Of a stretch of 64,000 nucleotides of DNA, positions 41,408 to 61,619 are shown one piece after another. The DNA is from Hyalangium minutum (lineage in GTDB: Bacteria; Myxococcota; Myxococcia; Myxococcales; Myxococcaceae), in NCBI RefSeq assembly GCF_000737315.1, contig NZ_JMCB01000006.1, forward strand, positions 124,001-188,000, in the 5' to 3' direction. The notes beneath the pieces were generated by a model. That model was not told where the DNA came from and did not search any database. It saw nothing but the letters and a program-made list of their open reading frames with translations. Every line of letters begins with the position of its first letter. Positions within the stretch are counted from its first letter, which is position 1. The position numbers and the translations under genes were made by a program.

Positions 41408-43651
41408 TCAGTGCCCTCCCAGCACCTTGTCGAGGGTGACGGGCAGGCTCCGGACGCGCTTGCCCGTCGCGTGGAAGATGGCGTTGGAGATCGCCGCTGC
41501 CACTCCGACGATGCCAATCTCCCCCAAGCCCTTGGCGCCCAGCGGGTTGACGACGGTGTCGTCCTCGTCAACGAAGAGGACCTCGATGTCCCGCACATCG
41601 GCGTTCACGGGCACGTGGTACTCGCCGAGGTTGTGGTTGATGAACCGGCCGAGTGCCGTGTCGACGACGGACTCCTCCTCCAGGGCCATACCGATGCCCC
41701 AGACGACGCCTCCCAGCACCTGACTGCGCGCCGTCTTCGGGTTCATGATGCGCCCGCCCGCCACGGCGGTGACGACGCGGGTCACCTGGATGATGCCCAG
41801 GTCCTCGTCCACCTTCACCTCCGCGAACACCGCCGAGTGCGCGGCCCGGGTGTACTTCTGCTGCTCGGAGAGGTTGGGCAGCGCCATCGTCTGCTCCTCG
41901 ATGCTCAGCACCTCGCCGTGCCGCATCGCCTCGAGCAGGGACACGGCCTTCGTGGGGTCCGCCTTTAGCCTGATTTGCCCACCCGCGAAGAACACCTCCT
42001 CCAGCTCCGACTTGGCGAGCGGTGAGCCGCGCACCTTCCGGGCCAGTTTGAACAACTGCTCGCGCACCTTCTCGCAGACCTCCTTCACCGCTGTGCCCAC
42101 GGAGGCCACCGTCCACGAGCCTCCCTCCAGCGGCGCGGGCGGCAGCGAGGAGTCGCCGAGCTTGAACGTCACGTCTTCCATCGGCAGCCCCAGCGTCTCC
42201 GCCGCGATCTGGGTCATCACCGTATAGGTGCCGGTGCCAATGTCCGAGGTGGCGCTGGACACGGTGAGCTTGCCGTCGATGCTCAGCAGGGCCTTGGCGC
42301 TGGCCGGCTGCTGCATCGCCTCCCAGACACCGGTGGCCATGCCCCAGCCGATGAGCTGCTTCCCGTCACGCATCGAGCGGGGCGTCGCCACCCGCCTGCC
42401 CCACCCGAAGCGCTCGGCGCCCTGGTGGTAGCAGGCCCGCAGCTCCTTGCTCGAGAACGGCTTGTCCGCGTTCTGGTCGCGCTCCGCGTAGTTCTTGAGG
42501 CGCAGCGCGAGCGGATCCACTCCCGCCGCATAGGCCAGCTCATCCATCGCGCACTCCAGCGCGTAGACGCCCCAGGCCGCTCCCGGCGCACGCATGTCGA
42601 GCGGCGTGTAGTGGTCCAGCGAGGCCACCTTGTAATCGAGCCGCACGTTGTCGCACTGGTAGAGCAGGCCGGACCAGTTGACGATGATCTCCGCGTAGTC
42701 CTCGAAGCGCGAGGTCTCCGAGATGGCCTCGTGGATGAGGGCCTGGAGCGTGCCGTCCGCCGACGCGCCGAGCGCCAGCCGCTGCAGCGTCGCGGGGCGG
42801 TGGCCGAACGTGAACATCTGCTGGCGCGTCATCACCACCCGCACCGAGCGCTTCAGCTCCCGCGACGCCATGACCGCGAGGAACAGCTGATACTGCGGCC
42901 GCAGCGCCGAGCCGAACGCTCCCCCCACGAAGGGTGAGCGCACGCGCGCCTCGCCCTCGGCCAGGTTGAACACCTTCGAGAGGTACTTCAGGCTGTTCTG
43001 CACGCCCTGCGTCTTGTCGTAGATGGTGAGCGTGCCGTCGTCCTCGTAGACCACCGTGGCCGCGTGCATCTCCATCGGGTTGTGGTGCTCGACCGGCGTC
43101 TCGTACTCCACGTCGATCCGCACCTCGGACTGGGCCAGTGCCTTGTCCGCATGGCCTCGGGGCTTCGGCGGAGGCTCGAAGCCGCCCTTGCCCATCTTCG
43201 GCGCTCGGGCCTTGCCGCGCTGCGCCCGTAGATCCGTCTCGTGCTTCTTGACTGAGTACTCGGCCCGGATGAGCGAGGCCGCGTAGCGGGCAGCCTCGAA
43301 CGTCTCCGCGACCACCAGCGCGATGGGCTGCCCGCTGTAGAGGATCTCGTCATCGTAGAGCGGCCGGAACGGTGAGCCCGCGGGCGAGTCCTCGTCCCGG
43401 TAGCTCTTATCGAACCATGGGAGCTTCGGCCGGTTCTCGTGCGTGAAGACGTGCAGCACCCCGGGCACCTGGAGCGCTTCCCTCGTCTCCAGCTTCTTGA
43501 TGCGGCCTCGGGCCACCGTGCTCGACACGACGACACCATAAGTAAGGCCGGGAGCTTGGAACTCTCCGGCGTACTTCGCCTGCCCCGTCACCTTCAGCGG
43601 TCCATCGACGCGGCTGACCGGCTTCCCCAGCAAGGGAGTGTGAGTGGTCAT
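41408..43651 (-). CDS. paoC: Xanthine dehydrogenase-family molybdopterin subunit (PaoC/YagR-like)
   Basis: [45 protein letters not shown]. Confidence 0.9.
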
Positions 43652-44643
43652 TGCTGCACCTCCGTTCCCGCCGCCTGCTCCAGCGCGCGGACCACCGCCC
43701 GCCGGGCCAGCTCAATCTTGAAGGTGTTGTGGCCATACCCCTTGGCGTCGCGAAGGATCGCGTCCGCCACGGACCGGAAGCTCTCCCCGGTGGCGCGCTG
43801 GCCGCTCAGCATCGCCTCGGCCTTCGTGTCTCGCCACGGCTTGTGCGCCACGCCTCCGAGCGCGATCCGCGCCTCCCGGATGACGCCTTCGTCCAGCTCC
43901 AGCCCCACCGCCACGGACACGAGCGCGAACGCGTACGACTGGCGGTCGCGGATCTTCAGATAGCTGAAGTTCCTCGCGAACCCCTTTGCGGGCAGGTCCA
44001 CCGAGGTGATCAGCTCGTCCGGCCGCAGGTTCGTGTCCAGGTGAGGCGTGTCCCCGGGCAGCCGGTGGAACTCGGCGATCGGGATGGTGCGCTCGCCGTC
44101 AGGTCCTTTGACTTGGATGGACGCTTCGAGCGCCGCGAGCGCCACGCACATGTCCGACGGGTGGGTGGCAATGCACTTCTCGCTCGTCCCAAGGATGGCG
44201 TGGATGCGGTTGATGCCCGCGAGCGCTCCACACCCCGAGCCGGGCTCGCGCTTATTGCAGGGCGTGCCCGTGTCATAGAAGTAGTAGCACCGCGTGCGCT
44301 GGAGCAGGTTGCCACCCGTGGTCGCCATGTTGCGCAGCTGCGCCGAGGCTCCCGCCAGGATGGCCTTCGACAGCAGCGGGTAGCGCTGCTCTACTCGCGC
44401 GTCGTACGCCACCGCCGAGTTCGTCACCAGCGCGCCAATCCTCAGCCCGCCGTCCGCCTGCTCCTCGATGGTGTTGAGAGGCAGCCGGTTGACGTCGATC
44501 AGGTGGCTCGGGCGCGACACGTTCTCCTTCATCAAGTCGAGGAGGTTCGTGCCACCCGCGATGAACCGCGCCCGCTCGTTCCGGGCAATCGCGCTCACGG
44601 CGCCCGCGACGCTGCCGGCCCGCTCGAAGGAGAACCGGTTCAT
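43648..44643 (-). CDS. paoB: FAD-binding subunit (PaoB/YagS-like, with 4Fe-4S insert)
   Basis: [29 protein letters not shown]...CNKR...[21 protein letters not shown]. Start at ATG 44643. Confidence 0.9.
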
Positions 44644-45176
44644 GGCTTCTCCTCCTTCTCGCACTCCTGCTTCGCCTGCTCGATGGCCGCGACGATGTTG
44701 GGATACGCGCCGCACCGGCAGAGGTTGCCGCTCATCAGCTCGCGGATGTCGTCTCTCGTCTGGGCCTTGCCCTCCTTGATGAGCCCCAGCGCGGAGCAGA
44801 TCTGCCCCGGAGTGCAGTAACCACACTGGAACGCGTCGTGCTCGACGAAGGCCGCCTGCAGCGGGTGGAGCGTCTCGCCCGAGGCAATGCCCTCGATGGT
44901 CGACACCTCCGCGCCGTCCTTCATCACCGCCAACGTCAGGCACGAGTTGATCCGCTGGCCATTCACCAGCACGGTGCAGGCGCCGCACTGCCCGTGGTCG
45001 CAGCCCTTCTTCGTGCCCGTCAGCTCCAGGTTCTCCCGCAGCAAGTCGAGCAGCGTCGTCCAAGGCTCGACCTCCAGCTGCTTCTCCGAGCCGTTGACCT
45101 TGAGGGTGATCGAATGCTTCGAGGGCGACTCCGCTGATGACACCCTCGCCGAGGGCTCATGGAAGGAAGGCTTCAC
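44640..45176 (-). CDS. paoA: 2x[2Fe-2S] subunit (PaoA/YagT-like), no Tat signal
   Basis: [31 protein letters not shown]. Confidence 0.92.
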
Positions 45177-45494
45177 GTGAACACGCTCCTGCTGGAGATG
45201 GATCCGGTCCTAGCGAGGTAAGGACTCGGAGCGCTCGCGTCCTTCCGGGGGAGCCCGCACCCACGGCGGAGGATTGGCTAATGGATACTGGCGCCCTACA
45301 GCTCCCCTCATCGTGTTGAGTCGTCGAAAGCGGCGCTGCGCTTACATAGGTCGACACCCCACGACAAGTGCACCTACGTGGAAACCCGCTCTCTCGGAAA
45401 AACAACCGTGGCCGCGTAAGCTGCACGCAACTGATCCGAGGGCGCGCGGAGAACCATTCCAGCCCCTTTTTTTCCCTATCGAAGGAGAAGTCCC

Positions 45495-48400
45495 ATGGCC
45501 CGCCCCATTGAATCCGGCTCCGCCGACGTCGCCGCCCGCGAGGCTGCACGCCGCGCCGCCGAAGAGGCCGCCCGCCGCGCCGCTGAAGAGGCCGCTCGCC
45601 GCGCCGCTGAAGAGGCCGCCCGCCGCGCCGCCGAGGCCAAGAACAATCAGGTGACGAACAAGGCGACCACGCCCGAGAAGCCGGTCGCCACCCGGGACGA
45701 GTTCGCCGCCACCAGCACCCCCCAGGCCAAGGGCCCGGACCTCGAGGGCGGCAAGCCCACCGAGTCGAAGCTGCCGGAGAAGCCCGAAGACTTGCCCAAG
45801 CTCTTCCCCGAGCTGAAGGACAAGCCCAAGGAGGTGCTGCAGAAGACGTATGACTCGATGAAGAAGCTCACCGAGGGCGACTTCTCCGAGAAGGCCACCG
45901 CGCTAGGCGAGCTGTCCAAGACGTTCCCGGACACCACCAAGAACGTCCTCACCAAGCTGGGCATTCAGGACAACAAGCTGGCGAAGCTGGCCACCAACTC
46001 GGACGCGCTGTCCGCGCTGGGCAAGCTCACCAGCAAGGACTCCTCCACCGCTGACAAGGCCAGCGCCGCGCTCGAGCTGGCCAACGCCGCCGGCGACATC
46101 TTCAAGCCCGAGGACCTCAAGGGCGTGCTCAACCACGCGCTCAACGGCCTGCCCGCGGGCGCCAAGCTCGCCGAGGCCATTGGGGCCTTCACCGACCCCA
46201 ACAAGAGCGCGCTGGACAAGACTAAGGCCTCGCTGGAGCTGGCCTCGGCGCTCAAGGACTTCGCCGGCAAGTCCTTCCCGCAGGTGGAGAACACCCTGCG
46301 CAAGCTGGACGGCACCTTCCGCGCCGCCAACGCCGCCGTGAAGCTGCTGGACCCCGAGGCCTCCGCCAAGGACAAGGCCCTGGCCGCCGCTCAGCTCGCC
46401 GCCGAGCTGCCGGACCTCAAGAAGGACCTCACCGAGTTCAAGAACCTGCTCAAGCAGAACGGCGTGAAGGGCGCGGACGCCGCCGTGGACGAGGGCGCGA
46501 GGCTCGCCGACGCCGTGGTGAAGGGTCTCGACCCGGCCGTGGCCCAGAAGCTCACCCCGGATCAGCTCAAGGGGCTCCAGGACGTGGCCGCCAAGGTCGG
46601 CCCGGAGAACCTCGAGGGCGTGCTCAAGGGCATCCAGGACCCCAAGGCGCTCGAGGCGCTCACGGGCCAACTCGACAAGCTGGATGCTGACTCCGGCAAG
46701 CGGCTGCTCAAGACGCTGGGCGGCATGGAGCACGGCAACCTCGCCAAGGTCCTCACGGATCCGAAGACGGCCGAGCAGCTGGGCACCCTGGCCACCAAGC
46801 TGGACGACGAGGCCGCCGAGCTCGTCGGCAAGCTGGCCAAGGACATGGACGTCGACGGGCTGAAGACGCTGATGAAGTTCACCGACGGCGTCAGCGGCGA
46901 CGTGCTCAAGACGGGCCTCAAGGGCCTCAAGCCCCTGCTGGAGGAGGGCGGCGGCAAGCTGGTGGGCAAGGGCCTCAAGCTGCTGGACGACATGCTCGGC
47001 AAGATGGGCGTGAAGGTCACCGGCGAGGTGGCCGGCAAGGTCTTCAAGAACCTGGCGAAGGCCATCCCGCTCGCGGGCGCCGTGCCGGGCCTCATCGACG
47101 CGGGCAAGTACGCCAAGGAGGCGATGGACCTCCGGGACAAGAACAAGGACCTGGGCTTCTTCGCGCTGGTGGGCGCCAACCTCAACGCCGCGGATGCGGT
47201 GGTGGGCACGGCGCTGGACTTCACCGGCGTGGGCGCCGCAGTGGACCTGGGCGCGGGCGCCGCCTTCGGCGTGGCCGAGCTGGCGCTGGACCTGGCCTTC
47301 GACGCCGAGAAGAAGAAGATGGAGGCGGATCCGCAGAACTACCAGGCGCCGGACTGGATGAAGGCCGTAAACCTGGGCGCCGCCGCCGCCATGGGCCCCG
47401 CGGGCATGACGCAGCTCGCGGCCTACTACGGGCCCGAGGGCGCCGCCGAGCTGACCCAGTGGGGCATCGAGAAGGGTGCCAAGGGCGCGGTGAAGCTCGC
47501 CGAGTTCGCGGGCGTCAGCGCCGCCAACGCCACCGGCGATGGGATGAAGCTCACGGCGGGCTTCATCCACGGGCTCGCGGATGTGATCCGCAACCCCTCC
47601 AAGTACGGCGAGGCCGTCGCCACCAAGGCGCGTGATGCGTTCAACGCCGCCATGGAGAAGGGTGGCGAGATTGCCGCGGAGGCCAAGAAGGTCCTCGGCA
47701 ACGTCATCGACGAGGCGAAGCAGCTCGGCGAGAAGGGGCTCGACACCCTGAAGTTCATCGCCCAGAACCCGGGCGAGGCCGCGAAGATGGCGCTCGACGG
47801 CGTCAAGAGCATGGTCGACAAGGGCATGGAGCTGGCGCAGCAGGGCAAGGAGGCCCTGCTGAAGAAGGCCACCGAGACGCTCGACGCGCTCAAGACGGGC
47901 TGGGAGAACCTCAAGGGTGCCGCCAAGGAGAAGGCAGCGGAGCTCATCAACGGCGCCAAGGAGGGCATCCAGTCCGCGCTGAACAAGGCGAAGGAGCTGG
48001 GCGAGAAGGGCCTCGAGACGCTCAAGTGGGCCGCCACGCACCCGGGTGAAGTGGGCGAGATGGCCAAGAAGGCCTTCACCGACCTGATGGCCAAGGGCGG
48101 TGAGGTGGCCAAGAAGGCCTGGGACGGGCTCAAGAGCCTGGGCGCCAAGGGGCTCGAGGTGGCCGAGGCCGCCGTCAAGGGACTCAAGGACGCGGGCGGC
48201 AAGGCGGTGGAGACACTCAAGTACATCGCCGAGAACCCGGGCGAGGCCGCCGCCAAGGTGCGCGACTGGGCCGGCCAGACGCTCTCGGACATGGCGCGCA
48301 AGGGCGGTGAGATGGCGAAGGAGGCCGCCACCGCCATCAAGGACTTCGTGGACCGGCGCGTGGACTGGGCCAAGCAGTTCGCCACGGACCTGCTCAAGGA

Positions 48401-48743
48401 CGGCGTGGAGTCCTTCAAGGAGGTCGCCAAGGCCTGGGGACAGAACCTCACCGAGGGCGGCAAGGAGATCCTCGGCGCGCTCAAGGATCTGGGCGGCGCG
48501 GGCGTGAACGCGCTGCAGGACCTCGCCAAGGCGGGCGGGCAGCTGGCTGAGGCCGCCGTGGGCTACTTGGGCGACCTGGCGAAGATGGGCGTGGACGCCG
48601 CGAAGGGCGCGCTCGAGGGCCTGGCGAACTTCGGCGGCGAGGTCGGCCGGCTGGCCAGCGGCGCGTTCGATGCGGTGAAGAACGCCACCAACGGCGAGAT
48701 GAGCGTCTTCGGCCACAAGGTGGACGTGAACCCGTTCTGGTGA
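45495..48743 (+). CDS. 1082-aa Ala/Lys/Gly/Leu-rich, Cys-free helical-repeat protein of unknown function
   Basis: SD AAGGAG; very strong GC3 bias; internal repeats; central hydrophobic Gly/Ala hairpin; no signal peptide. Confidence 0.85.
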   Translation: MARPIESGSADVAAREAARRAAEEAARRAAEEAARRAAEEAARRAAEAKNNQVTNKATTPEKPVATRDEFAATSTPQAKGPDLEGGKPTESKLPEKPEDLPKLFPELKDKPKEVLQKTYDSMKKLTEGDFSEKATALGELSKTFPDTTKNVLTKLGIQDNKLAKLATNSDALSALGKLTSKDSSTADKASAALELANAAGDIFKPEDLKGVLNHALNGLPAGAKLAEAIGAFTDPNKSALDKTKASLELASALKDFAGKSFPQVENTLRKLDGTFRAANAAVKLLDPEASAKDKALAAAQLAAELPDLKKDLTEFKNLLKQNGVKGADAAVDEGARLADAVVKGLDPAVAQKLTPDQLKGLQDVAAKVGPENLEGVLKGIQDPKALEALTGQLDKLDADSGKRLLKTLGGMEHGNLAKVLTDPKTAEQLGTLATKLDDEAAELVGKLAKDMDVDGLKTLMKFTDGVSGDVLKTGLKGLKPLLEEGGGKLVGKGLKLLDDMLGKMGVKVTGEVAGKVFKNLAKAIPLAGAVPGLIDAGKYAKEAMDLRDKNKDLGFFALVGANLNAADAVVGTALDFTGVGAAVDLGAGAAFGVAELALDLAFDAEKKKMEADPQNYQAPDWMKAVNLGAAAAMGPAGMTQLAAYYGPEGAAELTQWGIEKGAKGAVKLAEFAGVSAANATGDGMKLTAGFIHGLADVIRNPSKYGEAVATKARDAFNAAMEKGGEIAAEAKKVLGNVIDEAKQLGEKGLDTLKFIAQNPGEAAKMALDGVKSMVDKGMELAQQGKEALLKKATETLDALKTGWENLKGAAKEKAAELINGAKEGIQSALNKAKELGEKGLETLKWAATHPGEVGEMAKKAFTDLMAKGGEVAKKAWDGLKSLGAKGLEVAEAAVKGLKDAGGKAVETLKYIAENPGEAAAKVRDWAGQTLSDMARKGGEMAKEAATAIKDFVDRRVDWAKQFATDLLKDGVESFKEVAKAWGQNLTEGGKEILGALKDLGGAGVNALQDLAKAGGQLAEAAVGYLGDLAKMGVDAAKGALEGLANFGGEVGRLASGAFDAVKNATNGEMSVFGHKVDVNPFW
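45543..45635 (+). repeat. 24-bp tandem repeat (about 4 copies) encoding AARRAAEE
   Basis: gccgcccgccgcgccgc(t/c)gaagag-type units in residues 17-47. Confidence 0.85.
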
Positions 48744-50889: not shown

Positions 50890-53800
50890 TCAAGCCGCCT
50901 GGCCGGTGAGCCCCGCGTGCGCGCGCTTCACGCCCTCGCGTATCAGCTCGCGCAACCGCTCCGGGTCGAAGGGCTTCTCCACCCGGGGGTTGCTCACCTG
51001 CTCCAGGAACTCCTTAGCCGCGGGGGTGTAGGCCCCCCCGGTGATGAACACCATGCGCCGGGCCTGCTCCGGCGCGGCCCGCACGAGCTGGGCGTACAGC
51101 TCCATGCCCGTCATCTCCGGCATCATGAGATCGCAGAGGATGACGTCGTAGTGGGCCTTGGGCGAGCACAGCATCTCCAGCGCTCGCCGCGCGCTCACCA
51201 CCACCTCCACCTCGTGGTCCTTCGCGAGCGTCCGCCGCAGCGCAGCGCTCACCAGCGGATCATCGTCCACCACCAGCACTTGGCCCCGCTCCACGGTGCC
51301 CGCCTGCACCGGAGCGCTGCGCTGCACCCGATCGAGCTGGCTGCTCGACCGGGGCAACGCCACCCGGAACACGGTGCCCTTGCCCACCTGGCTCTCCACC
51401 TCGATGCGCCCGCCCATCGACGTGACGAACGCATGGCACAGCGCCAGTCCCAGCCCCGTGCCCACGCCCACCGGCTTGGTGGTGAAGAACGGATCGAAGA
51501 TGCGCCCGAGCACCTCCGGCGGGATGCCGCAGCCCGTGTCCCGCACCTCCGCCACCACCTCGCCCTGGGCCCCGTGCTTGAGAACGAGCCGGACCTCGTG
51601 CTGCTCGGGCCTGCCCTCGGGCAGCGCCTGGGCTGCGTTGATGATGAGGTTGAGGAACACCTGCGACAGCCGCGCCTCGTTGCCCTCCACGGGCGGCACC
51701 TCCGCCGCGTACTCGCGCGTGAGCTGGGCCCTGGGGCGCAGCTCCCCTGCCGCCATCTTCGCCGCCGAGTCCATCACCGCCCGCAGGTCCACCGGCCCCC
51801 GCGCGTCATCGTCCTGGCGCGAGAACGTCTTCAAGTCCCTCACGATGCGCCGCACCCGATCCGCGCCCATGAGCGCCTCGCGCAGCACCTGGTGCATGTC
51901 GCGCAGGCGCTCGCGCAGCGGCTCGGAGGACTCCGCCAACTGCGCCAGCGTCTCCGTCTCCTCGCAGGAGTGCTCCAGGTTGGACACGATGTACGAGAGC
52001 GGGTTGTTGATCTCGTGCCCCACGCCCGCGGCCAGTGTTCCCACCGCCGCCATCTTCCCAGCCTGCACCAGCTGGACCTGCGTGGCGCGCAGCGTGCGCA
52101 GGTTGGCATCCAGCTCCTCGTTGGCGCGCGCCAGCTCCTGGGTGCGCTCCTCCACGCGAGCCTGCAGCCAGCGCTCGCGCCGCTTGAGCCGGCCCACGCG
52201 CCACGCGTAGATGCCTGCCGCCATCCCACCCGCCCCCAGCGCGCACAGCCCGTAGAACCACGCCGACTGGTAGAACCAGGCGCGCAGCACCACCTCCAGC
52301 ACGGCCCCGGGCGCCACCCAGTTGCCCGTGCGGTCCATCGCCTGCACGCGGAAGGTGTAGCGGCCCGGCGGCAGCCGCGTGTACGTGGCCACGCGCCGGC
52401 CCTCGGCCTCCACCCACGCGCGGTCGTGCCCCTCCAGCATGTACCGGAACTGCACCCGGGGAGCCCCCTCCTTCACGAAGGCGGTGAAGCGGATGTCCAC
52501 GTCCTGCTGCTCCGGCTCCAGCTCCAGCAGGCCACTCAGCGGCACCGGCTGGCCCTGCACCCGCACCTCCTCGATGCGCGGGTGCGGCGGCGAGTGCCGG
52601 AGCCGGACATCCTTCGTGTTCACCATCATCGCGCCCCGCAGGTTGGCGAACCACATCCGGCCATCCCGCGTCTCCCACCCGGAAGGCAGGCCCGCGTTGC
52701 ACTCGCCCGCGCGCATCCCGTCCCGCTCATCGAAGAGGACGCCGCTCACGCGCGGGAGCTTGCCGTCCGCCACCGCCTCCAGCTCGTGCCGGCTCACCCG
52801 CGAGACGCCCTTGTTGCTGCTCATCCAGAAGAAGCCCTCGGCATCCAGCAGCAGGTTGAAGATCGTCTCATCCGGCAGCCCCTGCGCGGCGGTGACCGAG
52901 GCGAAGCGCCCGTCCTTCCAGCGCGACAGGCCCGTGGAGGTCCCCACCCACAGCGTGCCGTGCGCGTCCACGAAGAGGCTCATGATCACATTCCCCGCCA
53001 GTCCCTCCTGGGTGGTGAAGCGGGTGAGCGTGCCGCGGTCGAACCGGACCAGGCCCTTCTTCGTGCCGTACCAGAGCACCCCTGACTCCTCGCGCACCAA
53101 GGCCGTGGCGGCGTCCGCGGGAGTCCCCTTCTCTGGCGGGTACAGCGTCACCCGCCCATTGCTCAGCCAGGCCAGTCCCTCCGAGGTGGAGAACCACATA
53201 TCTCCGTCCGGCTCGGGCACCATGGCGAAGATGACGGCTCCTGGCGGCATCCCCGACTCGGTCCCCAGCGGGACGAAGCGGCCCCCCTGCTGGTAATAGG
53301 CGCCGGAGGACGTCCCCACCCAGAGCGCCCCGTCCGAGCCCAGCGCGAGCGTGCGGATGCGGTCCTCCAACAAGCCCTCCTCCGCTCCCACCCGGCGGAT
53401 GACGCCGTCCTTCATGCGCTCCAGGCCCTGGGAATTCGAGGCCATCCACAGCGTGCCGTCGGGTGTCTCCAGCACCATCCGGACGTTCTCGAGAACCGAA
53501 CCCTCGGGCGCCCCGATGGGAATGAACGGGCCATTGCTCAGCCGATGCAAGCCATCCGTCCCGGTGCCGATCCACAGGTGCCCGTCGCGGTCCTCGAGCA
53601 GGCTGGCCACGAGCGCATGGGCGAGCTCCTTGGACGCGGTGACGGCGCTGAACGTCTCACCCGTGCGCCGCAGCAAACCCTGGTAGGTGCCGATCCACAG
53701 GTTGCCATCCCGGTCTTCGCGCAGCTCGCCCACCGCCACGTTCGGCATGCCCTGCTCCGGGCCGTACCGGGTGAACTGGCCCTCGCGCAGGGCGAGCAGC

Positions 53801-54546
53801 CCCTGGTTGGTGCCAATCCACAGCGTGCCCTCGCGCGACAGCCACAGGCTGAGCACGTAGAGCGGCTTGATGGGAGACTCCCCCGGCGGCAGGAAGAGCA
53901 TGTCCACCGAGTCGTCGGTGATCCGCGCCAGCCCCTGGCCCGCTCCCACCCACGCGCCGCCCGAGCCATCCACGACGATGGGGCCCGTGCCTTTGACAGG
54001 CAGCCCCTCGTCCACCGAGTACCGCCGCCATGCCCTCTGCCCCGAGCTCGGCGCCCGCATCACCCCCAGCGGCGAGCTGATCCACACATCCTGGCCGTCC
54101 GCCGCCAGCCCGACGATGGGGACGTTGGCCAGCGCGGCGGCCTCGGGGGGGCGGCGCAGCTGTCCTCTCTCGTAGCGGAACAGTCCCTGGCTGGTGCCCA
54201 CCCACAGCACCGCCGCGTCGTCCTCGACCAGTGCGTGGATTTCGCGCTGCCCCATCTCCGGCGAGGTGCGCTGATCAAAGGTGGTGAAGCGCGTGCCGTC
54301 GAAGCGCGCCAGGCCCTCGTAGGTGCCGAACCACAGGTAGCCGTCGGCTGTCTGCTCAGCGCAGAGGACGGAGTTCTGCGGCAGGCCGTTCTCGCTGCGC
54401 CAGCTCTCGTGGTTGTACTGGGAGAGGCTCCGGCCCGGTTCGAGTGCGAAGCTGGGTGTACCGAGACCCAGCGCGAGGACGAACCACAGCCCGAGAAGCC
54501 TTCTCCCACCCCGCCGCCCCTGTCTCCTTGTTCCCATGGCGAGCAT
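50890..54546 (-). CDS. Hybrid sensor kinase: Reg_prop beta-propellers, Y_Y_Y, TM, HisKA, HATPase, REC
   Basis: Repeated D..G.LW.GT..GL units; YTRLPPGRYTFRVQA; GHEINNP; QVFLNLIINA; ILCDLMMP. Start placed at ATG 54546 or 54537. Confidence 0.92.
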   Translation of the reverse strand: MLAMGTRRQGRRGGRRLLGLWFVLALGLGTPSFALEPGRSLSQYNHESWRSENGLPQNSVLCAEQTADGYLWFGTYEGLARFDGTRFTTFDQRTSPEMGQREIHALVEDDAAVLWVGTSQGLFRYERGQLRRPPEAAALANVPIVGLAADGQDVWISSPLGVMRAPSSGQRAWRRYSVDEGLPVKGTGPIVVDGSGGAWVGAGQGLARITDDSVDMLFLPPGESPIKPLYVLSLWLSREGTLWIGTNQGLLALREGQFTRYGPEQGMPNVAVGELREDRDGNLWIGTYQGLLRRTGETFSAVTASKELAHALVASLLEDRDGHLWIGTGTDGLHRLSNGPFIPIGAPEGSVLENVRMVLETPDGTLWMASNSQGLERMKDGVIRRVGAEEGLLEDRIRTLALGSDGALWVGTSSGAYYQQGGRFVPLGTESGMPPGAVIFAMVPEPDGDMWFSTSEGLAWLSNGRVTLYPPEKGTPADAATALVREESGVLWYGTKKGLVRFDRGTLTRFTTQEGLAGNVIMSLFVDAHGTLWVGTSTGLSRWKDGRFASVTAAQGLPDETIFNLLLDAEGFFWMSSNKGVSRVSRHELEAVADGKLPRVSGVLFDERDGMRAGECNAGLPSGWETRDGRMWFANLRGAMMVNTKDVRLRHSPPHPRIEEVRVQGQPVPLSGLLELEPEQQDVDIRFTAFVKEGAPRVQFRYMLEGHDRAWVEAEGRRVATYTRLPPGRYTFRVQAMDRTGNWVAPGAVLEVVLRAWFYQSAWFYGLCALGAGGMAAGIYAWRVGRLKRRERWLQARVEERTQELARANEELDANLRTLRATQVQLVQAGKMAAVGTLAAGVGHEINNPLSYIVSNLEHSCEETETLAQLAESSEPLRERLRDMHQVLREALMGADRVRRIVRDLKTFSRQDDDARGPVDLRAVMDSAAKMAAGELRPRAQLTREYAAEVPPVEGNEARLSQVFLNLIINAAQALPEGRPEQHEVRLVLKHGAQGEVVAEVRDTGCGIPPEVLGRIFDPFFTTKPVGVGTGLGLALCHAFVTSMGGRIEVESQVGKGTVFRVALPRSSSQLDRVQRSAPVQAGTVERGQVLVVDDDPLVSAALRRTLAKDHEVEVVVSARRALEMLCSPKAHYDVILCDLMMPEMTGMELYAQLVRAAPEQARRMVFITGGAYTPAAKEFLEQVSNPRVEKPFDPERLRELIREGVKRAHAGLTGQAA

Positions 54547-54672
54547 AGTGTCCAGCACAGAGGGCCCTCTCCGCAAAATAGGGGACAGGACAGCCCCCCT
54601 TGCCCCCCTATTCCCCGAGGCAGCGACGCTCTTCCCCCGGGGGGCCGCTGTGCGGACATGGGACCCCAGCGC

Positions 54673-54695
54673 TACAATCGCCCTCCGCCGAGGAG
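54673..54695 (+). promoter_or_regulatory. Putative sigma70 -10 (TACAAT) and SD (AGGAG) of the permuted papain gene
   Basis: TACAAT at 54673, AGGAG at 54691, ATG at 54701; no convincing -35. Confidence 0.4.
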
Positions 54696-54700
54696 CCCCC

Positions 54701-55291
54701 ATGAGCCAAGCCGCCATCCTGTTGCAGGACCCCGCTCCCCCGAGCGTCCCCGAGGCGATCTCGAAGGGCCGCAGCACCCTCATCGGGTTCTCCACGCCGC
54801 GCCACTTCAACCCCGTCTCGTGGGTCGTCCGCCGCTTCACCAAGAGCGAGGCCAGCCACTGCTTCTTCCTCTACTGGGACGACGACTTCGAGTGCGACAT
54901 GGTGCTCGAGTCCCATGAGCTGGGCTTCCGGCTCATCACCTGGAAGCGCTTCGTGAAGAAGAACCGCATCATCGCGCTCGTGGAGCCGGCCCATCCGCTC
55001 GACAAGGGCTTCCTGCGGCTGGGCGAGTGGGTGGGCAGCGTGTACGACTTCGGCGGGCTGATCGGCCAGTCCGTGGTGCAGTTCGGACGCTTCCTGCAGC
55101 GCAAGTGGCGCAACCCGTTCCGGTCCTCGCGGGCCATGTTCTGCAGCGAGTCCATTGCTCGCTGCATGCAGTGGGCCGAGCACCCGGATGCCAAGAAGTT
55201 CTCTCCCAAGGAGACAGCGCCGCAGGACCTGCTCGTGTTCTACCGGGAGCCGGGCCGAGCGGTGCTCCTCGACATCCAGAAGTGGAAGTGA
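54701..55291 (+). CDS. Permuted papain-like amidase (YiiX/YaeF, permuted NlpC/P60)
   Basis: His before Cys: ASHC ... YDF ... MFCSE ... P.DL. Confidence 0.8.
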   Translation: MSQAAILLQDPAPPSVPEAISKGRSTLIGFSTPRHFNPVSWVVRRFTKSEASHCFFLYWDDDFECDMVLESHELGFRLITWKRFVKKNRIIALVEPAHPLDKGFLRLGEWVGSVYDFGGLIGQSVVQFGRFLQRKWRNPFRSSRAMFCSESIARCMQWAEHPDAKKFSPKETAPQDLLVFYREPGRAVLLDIQKWK

Positions 55292-59987: not shown

Positions 59988-61301
59988 TCAGTACTCGCTC
60001 TGGGAGTTCTCGGAGCCGGACTCGGACTCTGACGGGCCTCCCGAGTGCGACGCCGACGCGGCGGGGGCGTTCGCGTACGAGGGCGCGGGGGGTTGCTGGC
60101 CGAGGAGGCCGCTGGCGAAGAACCCTCCCACCTGAGGCGGGGCGATGATGACCTGGATCTTGTCGGACAGCTTGTCAGCGAGGGTCTTCTGGATGAGGAG
60201 GGGGTTCTTGCTGATGAGGCTGGCGTCGCGGGCGAGCTGCTCGGAGGCGGCCTTGCCCGTCACCTCGACGCGGTAGGCATCGGACTCGGCGAGCTTGCGG
60301 CGGGCGTCGGCTTCTCCTGCGGCCTCGATGCGGCGAGCCTCGGCCTCGGCGCTGGCTTGGGTGAGGCGGCTGACCTTGGAGGCCTCGGCCTCCAGGCGGC
60401 GCTGTTCGATCTCCTTCTCCTTGAAGGGGAGGACGTGGCGCATGGCCTCGGCCTTGGCCTTGGCGGCGATGATCTCCTCGCTGGCGGCGGCCTCGGCGGC
60501 CTTCTCTCGGCGGACCTTCTCAGCCTCGGCGCTGAGGGCCGACTCCTTGATTTGCTTCTCCTTGAGCTCCAGCGTGTAGCGCATCTTCTCGGCGCTCAGC
60601 TCCTCGGCGAGCAGTGACTCCAGGCCCTGGCGGTACCGCTGGGGCAGGTCGACGTTGCCCAGGGTGATCGAGCGCAGGAGGACGCCATCGGCGGCCAGCA
60701 GGGGGCCAATCTCATCGGTGAGGGCCTTTTGGATCTCCCTGCGCTGGGTGGAGAAGATCTCCCGAACTGTGTGCTGGGCGAAGTGGCGGCGGAGCACGCC
60801 GTCGATGACGGGCTCGACGATCTCCCGGCCCACATCCTCCGGCATGGAGGCGGCCAGGGAGGCAACGCGAGACGGCTCGAGCGCGTAGCGGATGGTCACT
60901 TCGATGCCGATGGACAGGCCCTCCGCGGACTGGAAGGGGGCGGCGCCCTCGGCCTGGGTGCTGCGGCTGGGCTGGAAGACCTGGTCCTTCAAGCTATAGA
61001 GGTGGAGCCGGTGGACGTGGGGCACGAGCAGGGCCCAGCCCTCGCGCAGCTCCTGGCTGTTGCCGGTGAGCAGGTTCATCCGGATGCCCACCTGACCGGG
61101 CTCGATGAGGGTGACGGGGCGGGTGGAGACGGCCATGGCCACGAGGCCGGTCACCGTCAGCCCGGTGGCGATGCGGCGGCCGCGCGAGGTGAAGATGAGC
61201 CAGCGGACCTGACTGACTCCTGCGCCCGCGACGGCGCGGACTCCGAAGACGCTCTGCTTGATGACTGCACTCAGCTTCTCTTTGACGTTCTGCCAGTTCA
61301 T
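59988..61301 (-). CDS. SPFH (band 7/prohibitin/flotillin) membrane protein
   Basis: TM then IEPGQVGI..N; FQSAEGLSIGIEVTIRY; LRSITLGNVDLP; long AEA coiled coil. Start placed at ATG 61301. Confidence 0.9.
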   Translation of the reverse strand: MNWQNVKEKLSAVIKQSVFGVRAVAGAGVSQVRWLIFTSRGRRIATGLTVTGLVAMAVSTRPVTLIEPGQVGIRMNLLTGNSQELREGWALLVPHVHRLHLYSLKDQVFQPSRSTQAEGAAPFQSAEGLSIGIEVTIRYALEPSRVASLAASMPEDVGREIVEPVIDGVLRRHFAQHTVREIFSTQRREIQKALTDEIGPLLAADGVLLRSITLGNVDLPQRYRQGLESLLAEELSAEKMRYTLELKEKQIKESALSAEAEKVRREKAAEAAASEEIIAAKAKAEAMRHVLPFKEKEIEQRRLEAEASKVSRLTQASAEAEARRIEAAGEADARRKLAESDAYRVEVTGKAASEQLARDASLISKNPLLIQKTLADKLSDKIQVIIAPPQVGGFFASGLLGQQPPAPSYANAPAASASHSGGPSESESGSENSQSEY

Positions 61302-61307
61302 TGGTGG

Positions 61308-61334
61308 TTGCCCTCTCCCGCGAGGGAAGGGCAA
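61308..61334 (-). promoter_or_regulatory. 5' UTR hairpin covering the purine-rich RBS region of the SPFH gene
   Basis: mRNA UUGCCCU-UCCC-UCGC-GGGA-G-AGGGCAA-CCACCA-AUG. Confidence 0.4.
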
Positions 61335-61619
61335 TGCATGAGAGATACCCACCGCGTGGGCGGAGCGTGCCGGACGTGGGCGCTCGGAGCGCGTGAGGCG
61401 CGTGGCTGCGTGGACTCAAGCACTGTGGCTGGCGTGGCTCAGTGCCGCGCGCGGGTGCGTCCGGCAGACCGCGCTTCCAGCGCGGAGGGGGCTCACGCCA
61501 TGTCAAAAAATGCGAGTGAACTGGCGTGTGCTCTTGGCGGTCCTGGGTGGGCTCCTCCTGTCCGCGCACCCAGCAGCAACCCTGGATGTGCCAGACCGAC
61601 CTGTAAGCTCTAACCCGCC

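What the first reader, a model, noticed from the sequence alone, without database searches (positions are those of the whole stretch)
45495..48743. Giant Cys-free amphipathic-repeat protein with a central pore-former-like hairpin
Seen, in order: (i) AARRAAEE x4 and a low-complexity leader ending in RDEF; (ii) four repeats of L(T/L)x(2-6)SxxDK/EKAxAxx(E/Q)L; (iii) KNLAKAIPLAGAVPG and a roughly 50-aa Gly/Ala hydrophobic stretch (about 47150-47300); (iv) about 400 aa of Lys/Glu/Gly amphipathic helices with three copies of LGEKGL(D/E)TLK(F/W/Y)xAx(N/H)PGE-like units; (v) a terminal NPFW. It has no signal peptide, a strong SD and extreme codon bias, and is monocistronic. Inference: a highly expressed membrane- or lipid-binding protein. 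It could be a secreted pore-forming or translocator-like predation effector, or an apolipoprotein/perilipin-like coat for lipid bodies or vesicles.
Basis: partly seen in the sequence, partly recalled or inferred. Interest (0 to 1): 0.7.

Follow-up and report, generated by a model that had tools for sequence, protein, structure and literature searches.

The report
Uncharacterised membrane hairpin-and-belt protein family
This gene encodes a large, cysteine-free, all-helical myxobacterial protein from an unstudied family that combines one conserved greasy helical hairpin with a ~370-residue apolipoprotein-style amphipathic "belt", so it very probably binds a membrane or lipid surface, but which surface and why is unknown.

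Summary
Only "extreme codon bias" is overstated: the bias is high but not an outlier.

The protein belongs to an uncharacterised family. About 150 representative clusters were found, mostly Myxococcota, with some in other phyla. Its database name, "Dauer Up-regulated", is an automated label with no supporting evidence.

The family has three parts:
- a variable N-terminus;
- a conserved ~160-aa core with a helical hairpin, the only transmembrane-like segment in the family, which has fixed polar residues (K522, P525, G528, D535, N564, D567, D599);
- a ~400-aa C-terminal belt with hydrophobic periodicity of 3.64 residues, which is not 11/3. The phase holds across 19 predicted helix breaks, and the charge pattern is class A, as in apolipoproteins.

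No sequence or fold match was found to colicins, ClyA, translocators, apolipoproteins, LEA proteins or perilipins. Phasin and phage tape-measure similarities are weak and confined to the belt. There is no prophage context, signal peptide, secretion system or conserved partner gene.

Best reading: a protein that switches from a soluble form to a lipid-bound form, using the hairpin as a wedge and the belt as a surface binder. Whether it coats the cell's own lipid surface or is released to attack another cell's envelope is unresolved. Some relatives carry peptidoglycan-binding N-termini, which keeps the second option open.

The parts
45426..45437 (+). Conserved upstream block CGCAACTGATCC, followed by a T-tract at ~45466-45474. 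Candidate regulatory element of unknown class.
   Evidence: Conserved in the window and in loci L001, L002, L013 and L021. No sigma-70 consensus was found in the region.
45482..45487 (+). Shine-Dalgarno sequence AAGGAG, 7 nt before the ATG.
   Evidence: Read directly from the sequence. (A)AGGAG is also present upstream of the orthologues.
45495..48743 (+). Complete coding sequence: 1082 aa plus stop, Cys-free, net charge -8.
   Evidence: 40 full-length homologues.
45522..45647 (+). N-terminal Ala/Arg/Glu-rich helix (residues 10-51, with AARRAAEE x4). It is low-complexity and varies in length among relatives.
   Evidence: In some distant relatives this position holds LysM or PG_binding_1 domains.
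45648..45782 (+). Disordered Pro/Thr/Lys-rich linker (residues 52-96).
   Evidence: pLDDT 32-37. Poorly conserved and highly gapped in the alignment. GRAVY -1.16.
45783..47003 (+). N-terminal alpha-helical repeat (solenoid-like) domain, residues 97-503. It includes four ~53-aa units carrying DPxxSxxDKAxAxLxLA.
   Evidence: pLDDT mostly 80-93 and all helical. Internal repeats. Only generic HEAT/importin-like Foldseek matches at TM ~0.12. No 3.64 periodicity (power 3.2).
47007..47474 (+). Family-defining conserved core, residues 505-660. Near-invariant positions: G505, K522, P525, G528, D535, A557, N564, D567, D599, P635, G637, G646.
   Evidence: The core HMM hits 126 of 189 collected proteins. 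No PDB sequence or fold match.
47145..47327 (+). Gly/Ala-rich hydrophobic helical hairpin: helices 551-577 and 581-611, with the tip at TGVG 577-580. This is the proposed lipid-inserting element.
   Evidence: AlphaFold helices. KD19 max is 1.42 here, with a family median of 1.65; 72/111 members reach >=1.6, and this is the only such segment in the family. GRAVY +0.68.
47592..48689 (+). C-terminal amphipathic 'belt', residues 700-1065. It comprises 19 predicted short helices punctuated by Gly-Gly or NPGE, with a phase-coherent hydrophobic period of 3.64 and a class-A charge distribution.
   Evidence: The same periodicity is present in 73/75 family members with enough sequence after the core. 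Weak Phasin_2 and tape-measure profile similarity maps here.
47724..47777 (+). Repeat unit 1, LGEKGLDTLKFIAQNPGE (residues 744-761).
47997..48050 (+). Repeat unit 2, LGEKGLETLKWAATHPGE (residues 835-852).
48192..48245 (+). Repeat unit 3 (degenerate), AGGKAVETLKYIAENPGE (residues 900-917).
48690..48740 (+). C-terminal tail, predicted as a small beta-hairpin and ending in NPFW (residues 1066-1082).
   Evidence: Strands at 1068-1071 and 1074-1077 with low pLDDT. The motif GExxVxGxxVDxNPxW is conserved in most close orthologues but absent in Corallococcus and in the distant paralogues.

Best explanation
The gene encodes an abundant protein made in the cytoplasm that can switch between a soluble helical-bundle form and a lipid-bound form.

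Proposed mechanism (inferred):
- The conserved Gly/Ala-rich helical hairpin (residues ~551-611) wedges into a lipid layer. Its fixed polar residues (N564, D567, D599) would mediate self-association or line a polar path.
- The ~366-residue C-terminal belt opens at its Gly/Pro hinges and lies flat on the lipid surface. Its apolar stripe faces the lipid, Lys snorkels at the interface, and Asp/Glu point to water. This is the binding mode of exchangeable apolipoproteins and of the amphipathic helices in the 'umbrella' model of colicin-type proteins.
- The N-terminal helical-repeat domain and the variable leader act as a targeting or interaction module.

My leaning is that it acts from the cytoplasmic side on the producer's own lipid surface (inner membrane or a lipid inclusion) as a coat, stabiliser or shaper.

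Shown: the architecture, its conservation, the periodicity, the charge pattern, and the absence of a signal peptide or a partner gene.

Inferred: lipid binding itself, the conformational switch, the location and the physiological role.
For: Belt:
- Hydrophobic period 3.64, with power 625 against ~65 for the 95th percentile of shuffles. It is identical in all sub-windows and in 16 orthologues and distant relatives.
- Apolar face: 38-48% large hydrophobics and 0% Asp/Glu. Lys/Arg make up 17-27% at 60-150 degrees. Asp/Glu make up 47% at 150-180 degrees. This fits the class-A definition in PMC7451220.
- The phase is kept across 19 predicted helix breaks. A folded bundle does not need that; a helix that can extend along a surface does.
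- 73/75 family members have the belt after the core, against 8/101 with such periodicity before it.

Hairpin:
- It is the only transmembrane-like segment in the family and the most conserved block.

Cytoplasmic synthesis and own-cell action:
- No signal peptide in any of 111 members.
- No secretion, immunity, chaperone or phage genes nearby in about 50 loci across several phyla.
- Synteny is conserved within clades, which suggests vertical inheritance.
- Strong SD and above-average codon adaptation.
- Kinase-like N-terminal fusions in two giant relatives.
- Recurrent weak phasin/perilipin profile hits in the belt.
Against: - No lipid binding has been measured.
- In this particular protein the hairpin is only moderately hydrophobic (KD19 1.42, below the usual ~1.6) and contains several Asp/Glu.
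- AlphaFold predicts the belt as a confident folded array of short helices (pLDDT 85-92), so it might simply be a soluble repeat domain.
- About 7 of 43 diverse relatives carry N-terminal LysM or PG_binding domains. Those normally act outside the cytoplasm and so argue for an exported protein.
- Strict Cys avoidance (83/111 members Cys-free) is also more typical of extracellular proteins.
- M. xanthus did not turn up in the searches, so the protein cannot be a general requirement for myxobacterial lipid bodies or sporulation.
Confidence: 0.4

Rival explanations
1. Released envelope-attacking effector. The protein leaves the producer by a Sec-independent route such as a contact-dependent system, OMVs or lysis. 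It then binds a target cell's envelope and inserts the hairpin to perforate or translocate across a membrane, with the belt splayed on the surface as in the umbrella model.
For: - Hairpin-plus-amphipathic-helix layout.
- N-terminal LysM or PG_binding_1/2/3 modules with no signal peptide in relatives P0046, P0060, P0076, P0088 and P0105.
- Family-wide Cys avoidance.
- Acidic residues flank the hairpin tip (D575, D584), reminiscent (from my own knowledge) of acid-triggered insertion hairpins.
- Direction-specific profile similarity of the belt to phage tape-measure proteins, which are ejected into the host envelope (background in PMC5099701).
- The taxa are predatory.
Against: - No secretion system, chaperone or immunity gene is adjacent in any locus.
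- No fold or sequence match to any known pore-former or translocator.
- The gene is single-copy, vertically inherited and 50-85% identical across genera, which is unlike polymorphic toxins.
- Kinase-like fusions in some relatives.
- PG-type domains can be reused for cytoplasmic protein contacts (my recollection of Caulobacter SpmX, not verified here).
Confidence: 0.27
2. Soluble helical-repeat scaffold with no membrane role. The Gly/Ala hairpin is the buried core of a globular helical domain, and the belt is a folded HEAT-like solenoid that binds protein partners.
For: - AlphaFold gives confident folded helices for residues 97-520 and 850-1060.
- The only Foldseek matches are HEAT/importin-type solenoids, though not significant.
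- The hairpin in this protein is below the usual transmembrane threshold and contains acidic residues.
Against: - A folded solenoid has no reason to keep one helical phase across 19 breaks over 366 residues, nor a class-A charge arrangement.
- The hairpin reaches transmembrane-like hydrophobicity in 72/111 relatives.
- The Foldseek solenoid matches have TM ~0.12 and E>0.01.
Confidence: 0.12
3. Tape-measure relic or component of a phage-tail-like machine. The gene descends from a siphophage tape-measure protein, and either still serves a tail-like particle encoded elsewhere or has been exapted.
For: - The family profile hits the 80alpha tape-measure protein (6v8i_CF) at E=7e-4 over residues 947-1048, and reversed TMPs give nothing.
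- Tape-measure PHROGs hit several distant relatives: phrog_167 at 6e-15, phrog_1272 at 3e-12, phrog_4200 in 4 members.
- In the control, native scored 46 bits, reversed 18 bits and shuffled none.
- The 80alpha TMP shares the overall look: 1154 aa, Cys-free, a mid-protein hydrophobic segment, then a ~370-aa periodic region.
- TMPs often carry cell-wall modules (PMC5099701 and my own knowledge).
Against: - No tail, chaperone or baseplate genes sit next to the gene in about 50 loci.
- No homologue in 50,697 phage records or in IMG/VR.
- The window protein itself has no PHROG hit.
- The conserved core is not found in 80alpha or lambda TMPs.
- The similarity is confined to the belt, and part of it is compositional, since the reversed control still finds a TMP PHROG.
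- The TMP periodic region is chemically different: uncharged Trp/Asn/Ile/Thr 11-mers at 3.67 (PMC5099701).
- No significant Foldseek hit in the viral library.
Confidence: 0.08
4. LEA-type desiccation protectant, as the database label 'Dauer Up-regulated' implies. This would be a hydrophilic, largely disordered protein that folds on drying and shields membranes and proteins in dormant cells.
For: - NCBI and UniRef name many orthologues after C. elegans DUR-1, which is a group-3 LEA protein (bioRxiv 10.1101/2021.02.04.429810).
- The belt is a Lys/Glu/Ala/Gly-rich amphipathic helix.
- The hosts are soil bacteria that form desiccation-resistant spores.
Against: - No LEA_4 hit at E<=1, and none in 40 orthologues.
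- The period is 3.64, not the 11-mer 3.667.
- The belt's GRAVY is only -0.31, with 38-48% large hydrophobics on its apolar face.
- It is confidently predicted as folded.
- A conserved hydrophobic hairpin and a 400-aa helical-repeat domain are foreign to LEA proteins.
- Older records of the same proteins say 'hypothetical protein'.
Confidence: 0.06

Closest known systems
Exchangeable apolipoproteins (apoA-I, apoE, apolipophorin III), i.e. class-A amphipathic helix proteins
   Same: - A long run of amphipathic helices with basic residues at the polar/apolar interface and acidic residues at the centre of the polar face (definition in PMC7451220).
- Helices punctuated by helix-breakers.
- Predicted to be a helical bundle when lipid-free.
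- Cys-free.
   Different: - No sequence or fold similarity.
- Period 3.64 rather than 11/3.
- Punctuation by Gly-Gly or NPGE rather than single Pro every 11 or 22 residues.
- About 366 residues of belt plus a conserved hydrophobic hairpin and a 400-aa N-terminal repeat domain.
- Bacterial, with no signal peptide.
Phasins (PF09361 Phasin_2, PF05597) and perilipins (PF03036), coat proteins of storage granules and lipid droplets
   Same: - Amphipathic-helix coat chemistry.
- Weak profile hits fall in the belt: Phasin_2 at E=0.18 in the window protein, E<=0.01 in 5/40 orthologues, and above Pfam's cut-off in two distant relatives (P0099, P0052). Perilipin appears in 1/40.
   Different: - The window protein is far below the gathering score (12.5 vs 24.9 bits).
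- It is 5-10 times larger than phasins.
- It has the hairpin core and the N-domain.
- No PHA or TAG synthesis genes nearby.
Pore-forming colicins, the Bcl-2 family and the diphtheria-toxin T domain (the 'umbrella' helical hairpin inserters)
   Same: One hydrophobic helical hairpin embedded among amphipathic helices, in a water-soluble protein with no signal peptide. Acidic residues lie near the hairpin tip.
   Different: - No Pfam, PDB sequence or Foldseek match.
- No immunity gene.
- Conserved Asn/Asp lie inside the hairpin helices.
- The domain is embedded in a ~1100-aa protein.
- No evidence of export.
Siphophage tail tape-measure proteins (e.g. 80alpha TMP, PDB 6v8i chain CF; PHROGs 167, 1272, 4200, 5493)
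   Same: - About 1100 aa, all-alpha and Cys-free, with a mid-protein hydrophobic segment followed by a long region of strict helical-stripe periodicity.
- Weak direction-specific profile similarity within the belt.
- Relatives carry cell-wall-binding modules.
   Different: - Not in a tail gene module, and not found in phage genomes.
- The core is not shared.
- TMP repeats are uncharged Trp/Phe-marked 11/18-mers (PMC5099701), whereas this belt is a charged class-A helix at 3.64.
Group-3 LEA proteins (C. elegans LEA-1 and DUR-1), the source of the database name
   Same: Lys/Glu/Ala-rich amphipathic helical repeats (for LEA background).
   Different: - No LEA_4 match.
- Wrong period.
- Much less hydrophilic.
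- Predicted folded.
- Has a hydrophobic hairpin and a structured N-domain.

Membership tests
Group-3 LEA / DUR-1 ('Dauer Up-regulated' label) | Match to the LEA_4 profile (PF02987) | tested here: not met
   No hit at E<=1 in the window protein. None at E<=0.01 in 40 orthologues.
Group-3 LEA / DUR-1 ('Dauer Up-regulated' label) | 11-residue repeat, i.e. periodicity 11/3 = 3.667 | tested here: not met
   The peak is at 3.64 (power 625). Power at 3.667 is 54, below the shuffle 95th percentile of ~65.
Group-3 LEA / DUR-1 ('Dauer Up-regulated' label) | Strongly hydrophilic, intrinsically disordered when hydrated | tested here: not met
   Belt GRAVY is -0.31. The apolar face is 38-48% large hydrophobics. 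AlphaFold pLDDT is 85-92 for residues 850-1060. The hydrophilicity criterion comes from my own knowledge.
Exchangeable apolipoproteins (class-A helix proteins) | Class-A charge distribution: basic residues at the interface, acidic at the centre of the polar face | tested here: met
   Definition from PMC7451220.
Exchangeable apolipoproteins (class-A helix proteins) | Sequence or profile membership (Apolipoprotein PF01442 and relatives), or fold match to solved apolipoproteins | tested here: not met
   No Pfam hit. No PDB sequence hit. No apolipoprotein among the Foldseek matches.
Exchangeable apolipoproteins (class-A helix proteins) | Reversible lipid binding with bundle opening | not testable with these tools
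   Needs liposome or lipid-droplet binding assays.
Phasin (PF09361 / PF05597) | Profile match at or above Pfam's gathering score | tested here: not met
   The window protein scores 12.5 bits against a cut-off of 24.9 (E=0.18). 5/40 orthologues reach E<=0.01. Only distant relatives P0099 (31.1 bits) and P0052 (30 bits) pass.
Phasin (PF09361 / PF05597) | Association with PHA granules or PHA synthesis genes | tested here: not met
   No PHA genes in the neighbourhood. Granule association itself is not testable here.
Pore-forming colicin / Bcl-2 / diphtheria T-domain type | Hydrophobic helical hairpin surrounded by amphipathic helices in a soluble protein | tested here: met
Pore-forming colicin / Bcl-2 / diphtheria T-domain type | Sequence or fold similarity to the family | tested here: not met
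   Pfam, NCBIfam and PDB searches were negative. Foldseek best E was 0.01 for the full-length model (HEAT solenoids) and 0.98 for the core (TRP-channel helices).
Pore-forming colicin / Bcl-2 / diphtheria T-domain type | Adjacent immunity or lysis gene (colicins) | tested here: not met
   Neighbours are an XDH-type operon, an ECF sigma factor, an oxidoreductase and a histidine kinase. No neighbour is conserved across genera.
Pore-forming colicin / Bcl-2 / diphtheria T-domain type | Pore formation in membranes | not testable with these tools
   Needs leakage or conductance assays.
ClyA / T3SS translocators | Fold or profile match; linkage to a T3SS and its chaperone | tested here: not met
   No match. 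One relative has a YscO hit at 3e-4 only. No secretion genes nearby.
Phage tail tape-measure protein | Gene lies in a tail module, between the tail chaperone and distal tail genes as in 80alpha and lambda | tested here: not met
   No phage genes around the gene in the window or in about 50 related loci.
Phage tail tape-measure protein | Profile match to TMP families | tested here: inconclusive
   The window protein has no PHROG hit (best E=0.08 to a family of unknown function). The family profile matches the 80alpha TMP at E=7e-4, 21 bits. Distant relatives hit TMP PHROGs down to 6e-15. In the control, native scored 46 bits, reversed 18 bits and shuffled none, and the match lies only in the belt.
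Phage tail tape-measure protein | Homologues present in phage genomes | tested here: not met
   tblastn against 50,697 phage records found none. For relative P0060, only its LysM module matched. Scans of IMG/VR found none. The Foldseek viral library gave nothing significant.
Phage tail tape-measure protein | Trp/Phe-marked 11- or 18-residue repeats (PMC5099701) | tested here: not met
   The period is 3.64 with a charged polar face. The 80alpha TMP shows 3.67 with an uncharged Trp/Asn/Thr-rich pattern.
Sec/Tat-exported protein | N-terminal signal peptide | tested here: not met
   The N-terminus MARPIESGSADVAAREAARR... has no hydrophobic core. None of 111 family members has one. This was a hydropathy inspection, not a dedicated predictor.

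The most novel reading that the evidence does not exclude
This is the founding example of an unrecognised, multi-phylum family of Sec-independent membrane-inserting proteins ('hairpin plus belt'). Its conserved Asn/Asp-bearing hairpin would oligomerise into a pore or translocation channel, while a ~55-nm class-A belt grips the bilayer. The family may be a cellular cousin of the membrane-penetrating part of phage tape-measure proteins, used by predatory myxobacteria (with peptidoglycan-binding variants in other phyla) to breach neighbouring cells' envelopes.
Probability: 0.2. Interest if true: 0.85.

Novelty: new variant of a known kind. Interest (0 to 1): 0.55.

Why it matters
About 150 representative clusters of large proteins, conserved across myxobacterial genera and present in other phyla, have no Pfam family and no structure. 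Their only name is borrowed from a nematode LEA protein and is misleading.

The architecture is unusually legible: one conserved hydrophobic hairpin and a ~400-residue amphipathic helix that keeps its phase across the whole region. That makes a clear, inexpensive prediction of lipid binding.

If the protein coats or shapes a bacterial lipid surface, it would be a new bacterial counterpart of apolipoproteins or perilipins. If it is released and inserts into foreign membranes, it would be a new class of membrane-attacking protein in predatory bacteria, and a possible evolutionary link to phage tape-measure proteins.

Either way the annotation 'Dauer Up-regulated' should be replaced.

Tried and rejected
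Profile and sequence searches
- Pfam, NCBIfam, PADLOC and PHROGs on the window protein: nothing significant.
- PDB sequence searches:
  - The single sequence found nothing.
  - The family profile found only the 80alpha TMP (E=7e-4) and a designed helical protein.
  - The diverse-core profile's best hit was ankyrin-consensus DARPins at E~0.09, over a short ...LLxxGAxVNxxD-like motif. I treated this as chance.

Structure
- Foldseek on the full-length model: against the PDB only generic HEAT/importin solenoids (TM ~0.12), and nothing significant in the viral library.
- Foldseek on the core-only model: best E=0.98, to transmembrane helices of TRP channels and GPCRs, not significant.

Gene neighbourhood
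- No neighbour is conserved across genera. Downstream genes are unrelated to each other: a lysozyme-like gene in Corallococcus, a monooxygenase, NtrC-type activators, a transposase and GyrA.
- Relatives in other phyla are also stand-alone genes.
- A large upstream ORF that overlaps paralogue P0038 is an unrelated Kelch/Ig surface protein.

Phage link
- tblastn of the window protein against phages found nothing.
- tblastn of relative P0060 matched only its LysM module.
- Scans of viral contigs were empty. One attempt with the diverse-core alignment failed for lack of a conserved stretch.

Other attempts
- A homologue search with the diverse-core profile returned only one hit.
- Literature searches for 'dauer up-regulated' with Myxococcus, and for orthologue locus tags and accessions, found nothing. 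The M. xanthus lipid-body paper contains no lipid-body proteome.
- No sigma-70 promoter or intrinsic terminator consensus was found.
- The GC-rich hairpin after the stop codon folds no better than shuffles (z=0.08).
- A sigma-54-like reading of the upstream TGGCC...CTGCA was rejected by eye because the spacing is off by one.

Full report

Yes. The window holds an ATG-initiated ORF at 45495..48743 (+) encoding 1082 residues.

- four AARRAAE(E/A) octads at residues 17-48, and RDEF at 67;
- the DK/EKAxAxx(E/Q)L units, as two strict and two looser copies, backed by internal BLAST at E=2e-5;
- KNLAKAIPLAGAVPG at 518;
- the Gly/Ala hydrophobic stretch at residues ~553-603, which corresponds to nt 47150-47300;
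- LGEKGL(D/E)TLK(F/W)xAx(N/H)PGE at 744 and 835, plus a degenerate third unit ending at 917;
- the terminal NPFW.

Internal repeats in residues 700-1075 reach E=7e-14.

The protein has no Cys, where ~10.8 would be expected from the other 43 genes of the window (P about 2e-5). Its composition is A 18%, K 12%, L 12%, G 11%.

AAGGAG sits 7 nt upstream of the ATG. The gene is flanked by a divergent upstream operon and a convergent downstream gene, so it is monocistronic by geometry.

Codon bias is high but not extreme: Nc is 29.5 (5th of 44 genes), and third-position C-over-G preference ranks 6th of 44. No sigma-70 promoter or intrinsic terminator consensus was found. The GC-rich hairpin after the stop is no more stable than shuffles.

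**2. What family is it?**

Profile libraries and PDB sequences give nothing significant for the protein itself.

The homologue search returned 40 full-length relatives of ~1040-1180 aa. They come from Stigmatella, Hyalangium, Cystobacter, Corallococcus, Archangium, Pyxidicoccus, one Myxococcus sp. and MAGs. Many are named 'Dauer Up-regulated' by NCBI/UniRef, while older records of the same proteins say 'hypothetical protein'. DUR-1 is a C. elegans group-3 LEA protein (bioRxiv 10.1101/2021.02.04.429810). The name is therefore an automated, untested transfer.

An exhaustive profile search found 150 representative clusters, 112 of them below 1e-10. These include proteins of 1500-3000 aa.

A scan of one genome per species found 42 loci:
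- some genomes carry two paralogues (Hyalangium versicolor, an Archangium MAG);
- there is one Thermoanaerobaculia MAG and one 'Proteobacteria' MAG;
- M. xanthus did not appear in this scan or.

**3. Anatomy**

The AlphaFold model built on the 40-sequence alignment is all-alpha, with mean pLDDT 76. From the N-terminus:

(a) An Ala/Arg/Glu-rich helix (residues 10-51) and a disordered linker (52-96).

(b) A confident helical-repeat domain (97-503).

(c) The most conserved block (505-660).
- It contains a helical hairpin, 551-577 and 581-611, with the tip at TGVG.
- Across 96 diverse cores the near-invariant positions are G505, K522, P525, G528, D535, A557, N564, D567, D599, P635, G637 and G646. 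These are polar Asn/Asp residues fixed inside Ala/Gly-rich helices.
- A core-only HMM finds this module in 126 of 189 collected proteins.
- The hairpin is the only transmembrane-like segment in the family. The median maximal hydropathy (19-residue window) is 1.65. It is >=1.6 in 72/111 members, against 1/111 anywhere else.
- 83/111 members are Cys-free, and none has an N-terminal signal-like segment.
- In the window protein the hairpin is milder (1.42).

(d) A C-terminal 'belt' (700-1065).

(e) A small terminal beta-hairpin ending in NPFW, conserved only among the closer orthologues.

**4. The belt**

Period and phase:
A first coarse spectrum showed a very large peak near 3.65.
- On a fine grid the peak is at 3.64, with power 625 against ~65 for the 95th percentile of shuffles. 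Power at 3.667 is only 54, and at 3.60 only 23.
- The same 3.625-3.65 period appears in every sub-window and in all 16 relatives tested, including ~30%-identical paralogues and giant proteins.
- Family-wide, 73 of 75 proteins with enough sequence after the core have it (median period 3.635, median power 510). Only 8 of 101 N-terminal flanks do.
- The phase is maintained across 19 predicted helix breaks. A folded bundle does not require that.

Charge pattern at period 3.64:
- The apolar face (0-60 degrees) is 38-48% large hydrophobics, 23-36% Ala and 18% Gly, with no Asp/Glu.
- Lys/Arg peak at 60-150 degrees (17-27%).
- The centre of the polar face is 47% Asp/Glu.
- This is the class-A pattern defined for exchangeable apolipoproteins (PMC7451220).

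Stretched out, the belt would be ~55 nm long.

**5.

- Foldseek of the full-length model against the PDB gave only generic HEAT/importin solenoids (best E=0.01, TM ~0.12).
- The core-only model (pLDDT 68, with residues 529-659 mostly above 85) gave nothing better than E=0.98, and those matches were to transmembrane helices of TRP channels and GPCRs.
- No colicin, ClyA, Bcl-2, diphtheria T-domain, translocator or apolipoprotein structure appears among the listed matches.
- Pfam over the 40 orthologues shows only weak, sub-threshold coat-protein signals in the belt: Phasin_2 in 5 (best 2e-4), and Perilipin and Phasin in 1 each.
- Two distant relatives exceed the Phasin_2 cut-off.
- LEA_4 never appears. 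The belt's GRAVY is -0.31, so it is not strongly hydrophilic as LEA proteins are.

**6. The tape-measure question**

Evidence for a link:
- The family profile weakly matches the 80alpha tape-measure protein (PDB 6v8i_CF) at E=7e-4 and 21 bits, over residues 947-1048.
- Tape-measure PHROGs hit several distant relatives: phrog_167 at 6e-15, phrog_1272 at 3e-12, phrog_4200 in four members and phrog_5493 in three.

Control on relative P0060 from residue 480 to its C-terminus:
- The native sequence scored 46 bits (3e-12).
- The reversed sequence still found a tape-measure PHROG, but at 18 bits (1.5e-3).
- The shuffled sequence found nothing.
- So part of the signal is composition and periodicity, and part is direction-specific.
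- The matched stretch lies after the core, in the belt.

Evidence against membership:
- The window protein has no PHROG hit.
- tblastn against 50,697 phage records finds nothing, or only the LysM module of a relative.
- IMG/VR scans are empty, and the viral fold library gives nothing significant.
- The core HMM does not match the 80alpha or lambda TMPs.
- No tail genes flank the gene in the window or in about 50 related loci. Bona fide TMPs lie between the tail chaperones and distal tail genes.

Comparison with the 80alpha TMP:
- It shares the overall look: 1154 aa, Cys-free, a hydrophobic segment near residue 700, then ~370 residues with a 3.67 stripe.
- Its periodic region is chemically different. 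It is made of uncharged Trp/Asn/Ile/Thr 11-mers with 0.3% Glu, like the Trp/Phe 11/18-mers of the TP901-1 TMP (PMC5099701).

I conclude that there is a resemblance, and possibly a distant relationship of the belt repeats. The protein is not a tape-measure protein, and there is no prophage context.

**7. Context and accessory domains**

Neighbours in the window:
- upstream and divergent, a three-subunit xanthine-dehydrogenase-type operon;
- downstream and convergent, an ECF sigma factor, a pyridine-nucleotide-disulphide oxidoreductase and a hybrid histidine kinase.

No neighbour is conserved across genera, and synteny holds only within clades. Genes directly downstream in different genera are unrelated to each other.

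Among 43 diverse relatives:
- peptidoglycan-binding modules recur: LysM in 4, PG_binding_1 in 3, PG_binding_3 in 2 and PG_binding_2 in 1;
- they sit at the extreme N-terminus with no signal peptide ahead of them (for example, PG_binding_1 at residues 2-55 of P0105 and LysM from residue 6 of P0060);
- they occupy the position that the window protein gives to its Ala/Arg/Glu leader.

The LysM-bearing near-full-length relative P0046 comes from a Pseudomonadota MAG and is again a stand-alone gene. Two giant relatives have weak kinase-like N-terminal regions.

**8. Interpretation**

The shown facts are:
- a conserved hairpin that is the sole transmembrane-like element;
- a phase-coherent class-A belt;
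- Cys avoidance;
- no signal peptide;
- no partner genes;
- moderately strong expression signals.

They are best explained by a protein that binds a lipid surface with the belt and wedges the hairpin into it. It would switch from a soluble bundle to a lipid-bound state. That step is inferred.

Where this happens is open.
- For action on the producer's own inner membrane or lipid inclusions:
  - there is no export signal or export machinery anywhere in the family;
  - inheritance looks vertical;
  - the gene has abundant-protein features;
  - some relatives have kinase-like fusions;
  - the belt resembles phasins and perilipins.
- For a released, envelope-attacking role:
  - some relatives have peptidoglycan-binding N-termini;
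  - Cys avoidance is family-wide;
  - the belt resembles tape-measure proteins;
  - the hosts are predatory.

My probabilities are:

| Explanation | Probability |
|---|---|
| Own-cell coat or stabiliser | 0.40 |
| Released effector | 0.27 |
| Soluble scaffold | 0.12 |
| Tape-measure relic | 0.08 |
| LEA-type protectant | 0.06 |

The remainder is unassigned.

**9. Novelty and verdict**

The family is present in databases but uncharacterised and misleadingly named. The working principle (amphipathic belt plus insertion hairpin) is known from apolipoproteins and umbrella-type inserters. The defining features of every named family that could be tested were not met, apart from the class-A pattern and the hairpin layout.

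I rate it a new variant of a known kind, with interest 0.55.

Noticed in passing
window 41408-45176 (-): A three-subunit xanthine-dehydrogenase/aldehyde-oxidase-type operon (2Fe-2S, FAD and molybdopterin subunits) lies between the P450 plus 376-aa gene pair and the target gene. In Hyalangium versicolor (L013) and MAGs L002 and L021 the 376-aa gene directly precedes the target, so this operon is an insertion here or a loss there.
   Followed up: partly
window 48779-~49660 (-) and 50890-54843 (-): An ECF sigma factor with a ~130-aa C-terminal extension, and a 1317-aa hybrid histidine kinase with Reg_prop/Y_Y_Y sensor repeats. These are the downstream neighbours conserved only in the closest clade (L002, L013, L021).
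   Followed up: partly
window 45426-45437 and 45466-45474: The upstream block CGCAACTGATCC and a T-tract are conserved in the window and four related loci. Corallococcus orthologues share a different conserved upstream block (GGCAACATTCGCCGCGAAATGTAGAGAATCC). No known promoter class could be assigned.
   Followed up: partly
L009 11198-12784 (+), and the equivalent gene in at least nine Corallococcus loci: A ~530-aa gene lies directly downstream of the orthologue on the same strand. By eye it has a lytic-transglycosylase/lysozyme-like motif (..AIASRESRAG..GFGVMQVD..) and a PG_binding_1-like segment (..DGKFGPVT..), with no signal peptide. The precomputed Pfam record lists no hit, so this is unverified.
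   Followed up: no
L048 3272-8029 (+): A 1585-aa Kelch-repeat and Ig-like protein with a MYXO-CTERM-like tail (GC...hydrophobic...RR). Its called ORF overlaps the start of distant paralogue P0038 by 29 nt. It is unrelated to the family by HMM.
   Followed up: yes
window 47145-47225 (residues ~551-577): The family-wide core motif ..E(I/V)RxLALxGAxxNxxD.. weakly resembles the ankyrin-repeat consensus ..(I/V)VxLLLxxGAxVNAxD.. (DARPins at E~0.09). It is not significant and was treated as chance.
   Followed up: no
L046 1729-5193 (Staphylococcus phage 80alpha tape-measure gene): The 80alpha TMP shows three regimes: a 3.5 (heptad) periodicity over residues ~361-846, a very hydrophobic segment at ~696-716 (KD19 3.0), and a 3.67-periodic array of uncharged Trp/Asn/Ile/Thr 11-mers at ~720-935. 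Lambda gpH shows no comparable periodicity.
   Followed up: partly
window 1049-2299 (-) and 59988-61352 (-): These are the only other Cys-free ORFs among the 44 crude gene calls. The second also has the strongest third-position C preference in the window (0.757).
   Followed up: no
P0124 (2515 aa, from the representative search): An ankyrin-NACHT-HEAT protein matched the family profile at 1e-23 through its HEAT repeats. This is probably a repeat-driven false relative, and a warning that low-scoring belt-only hits may not be family members.
   Followed up: no
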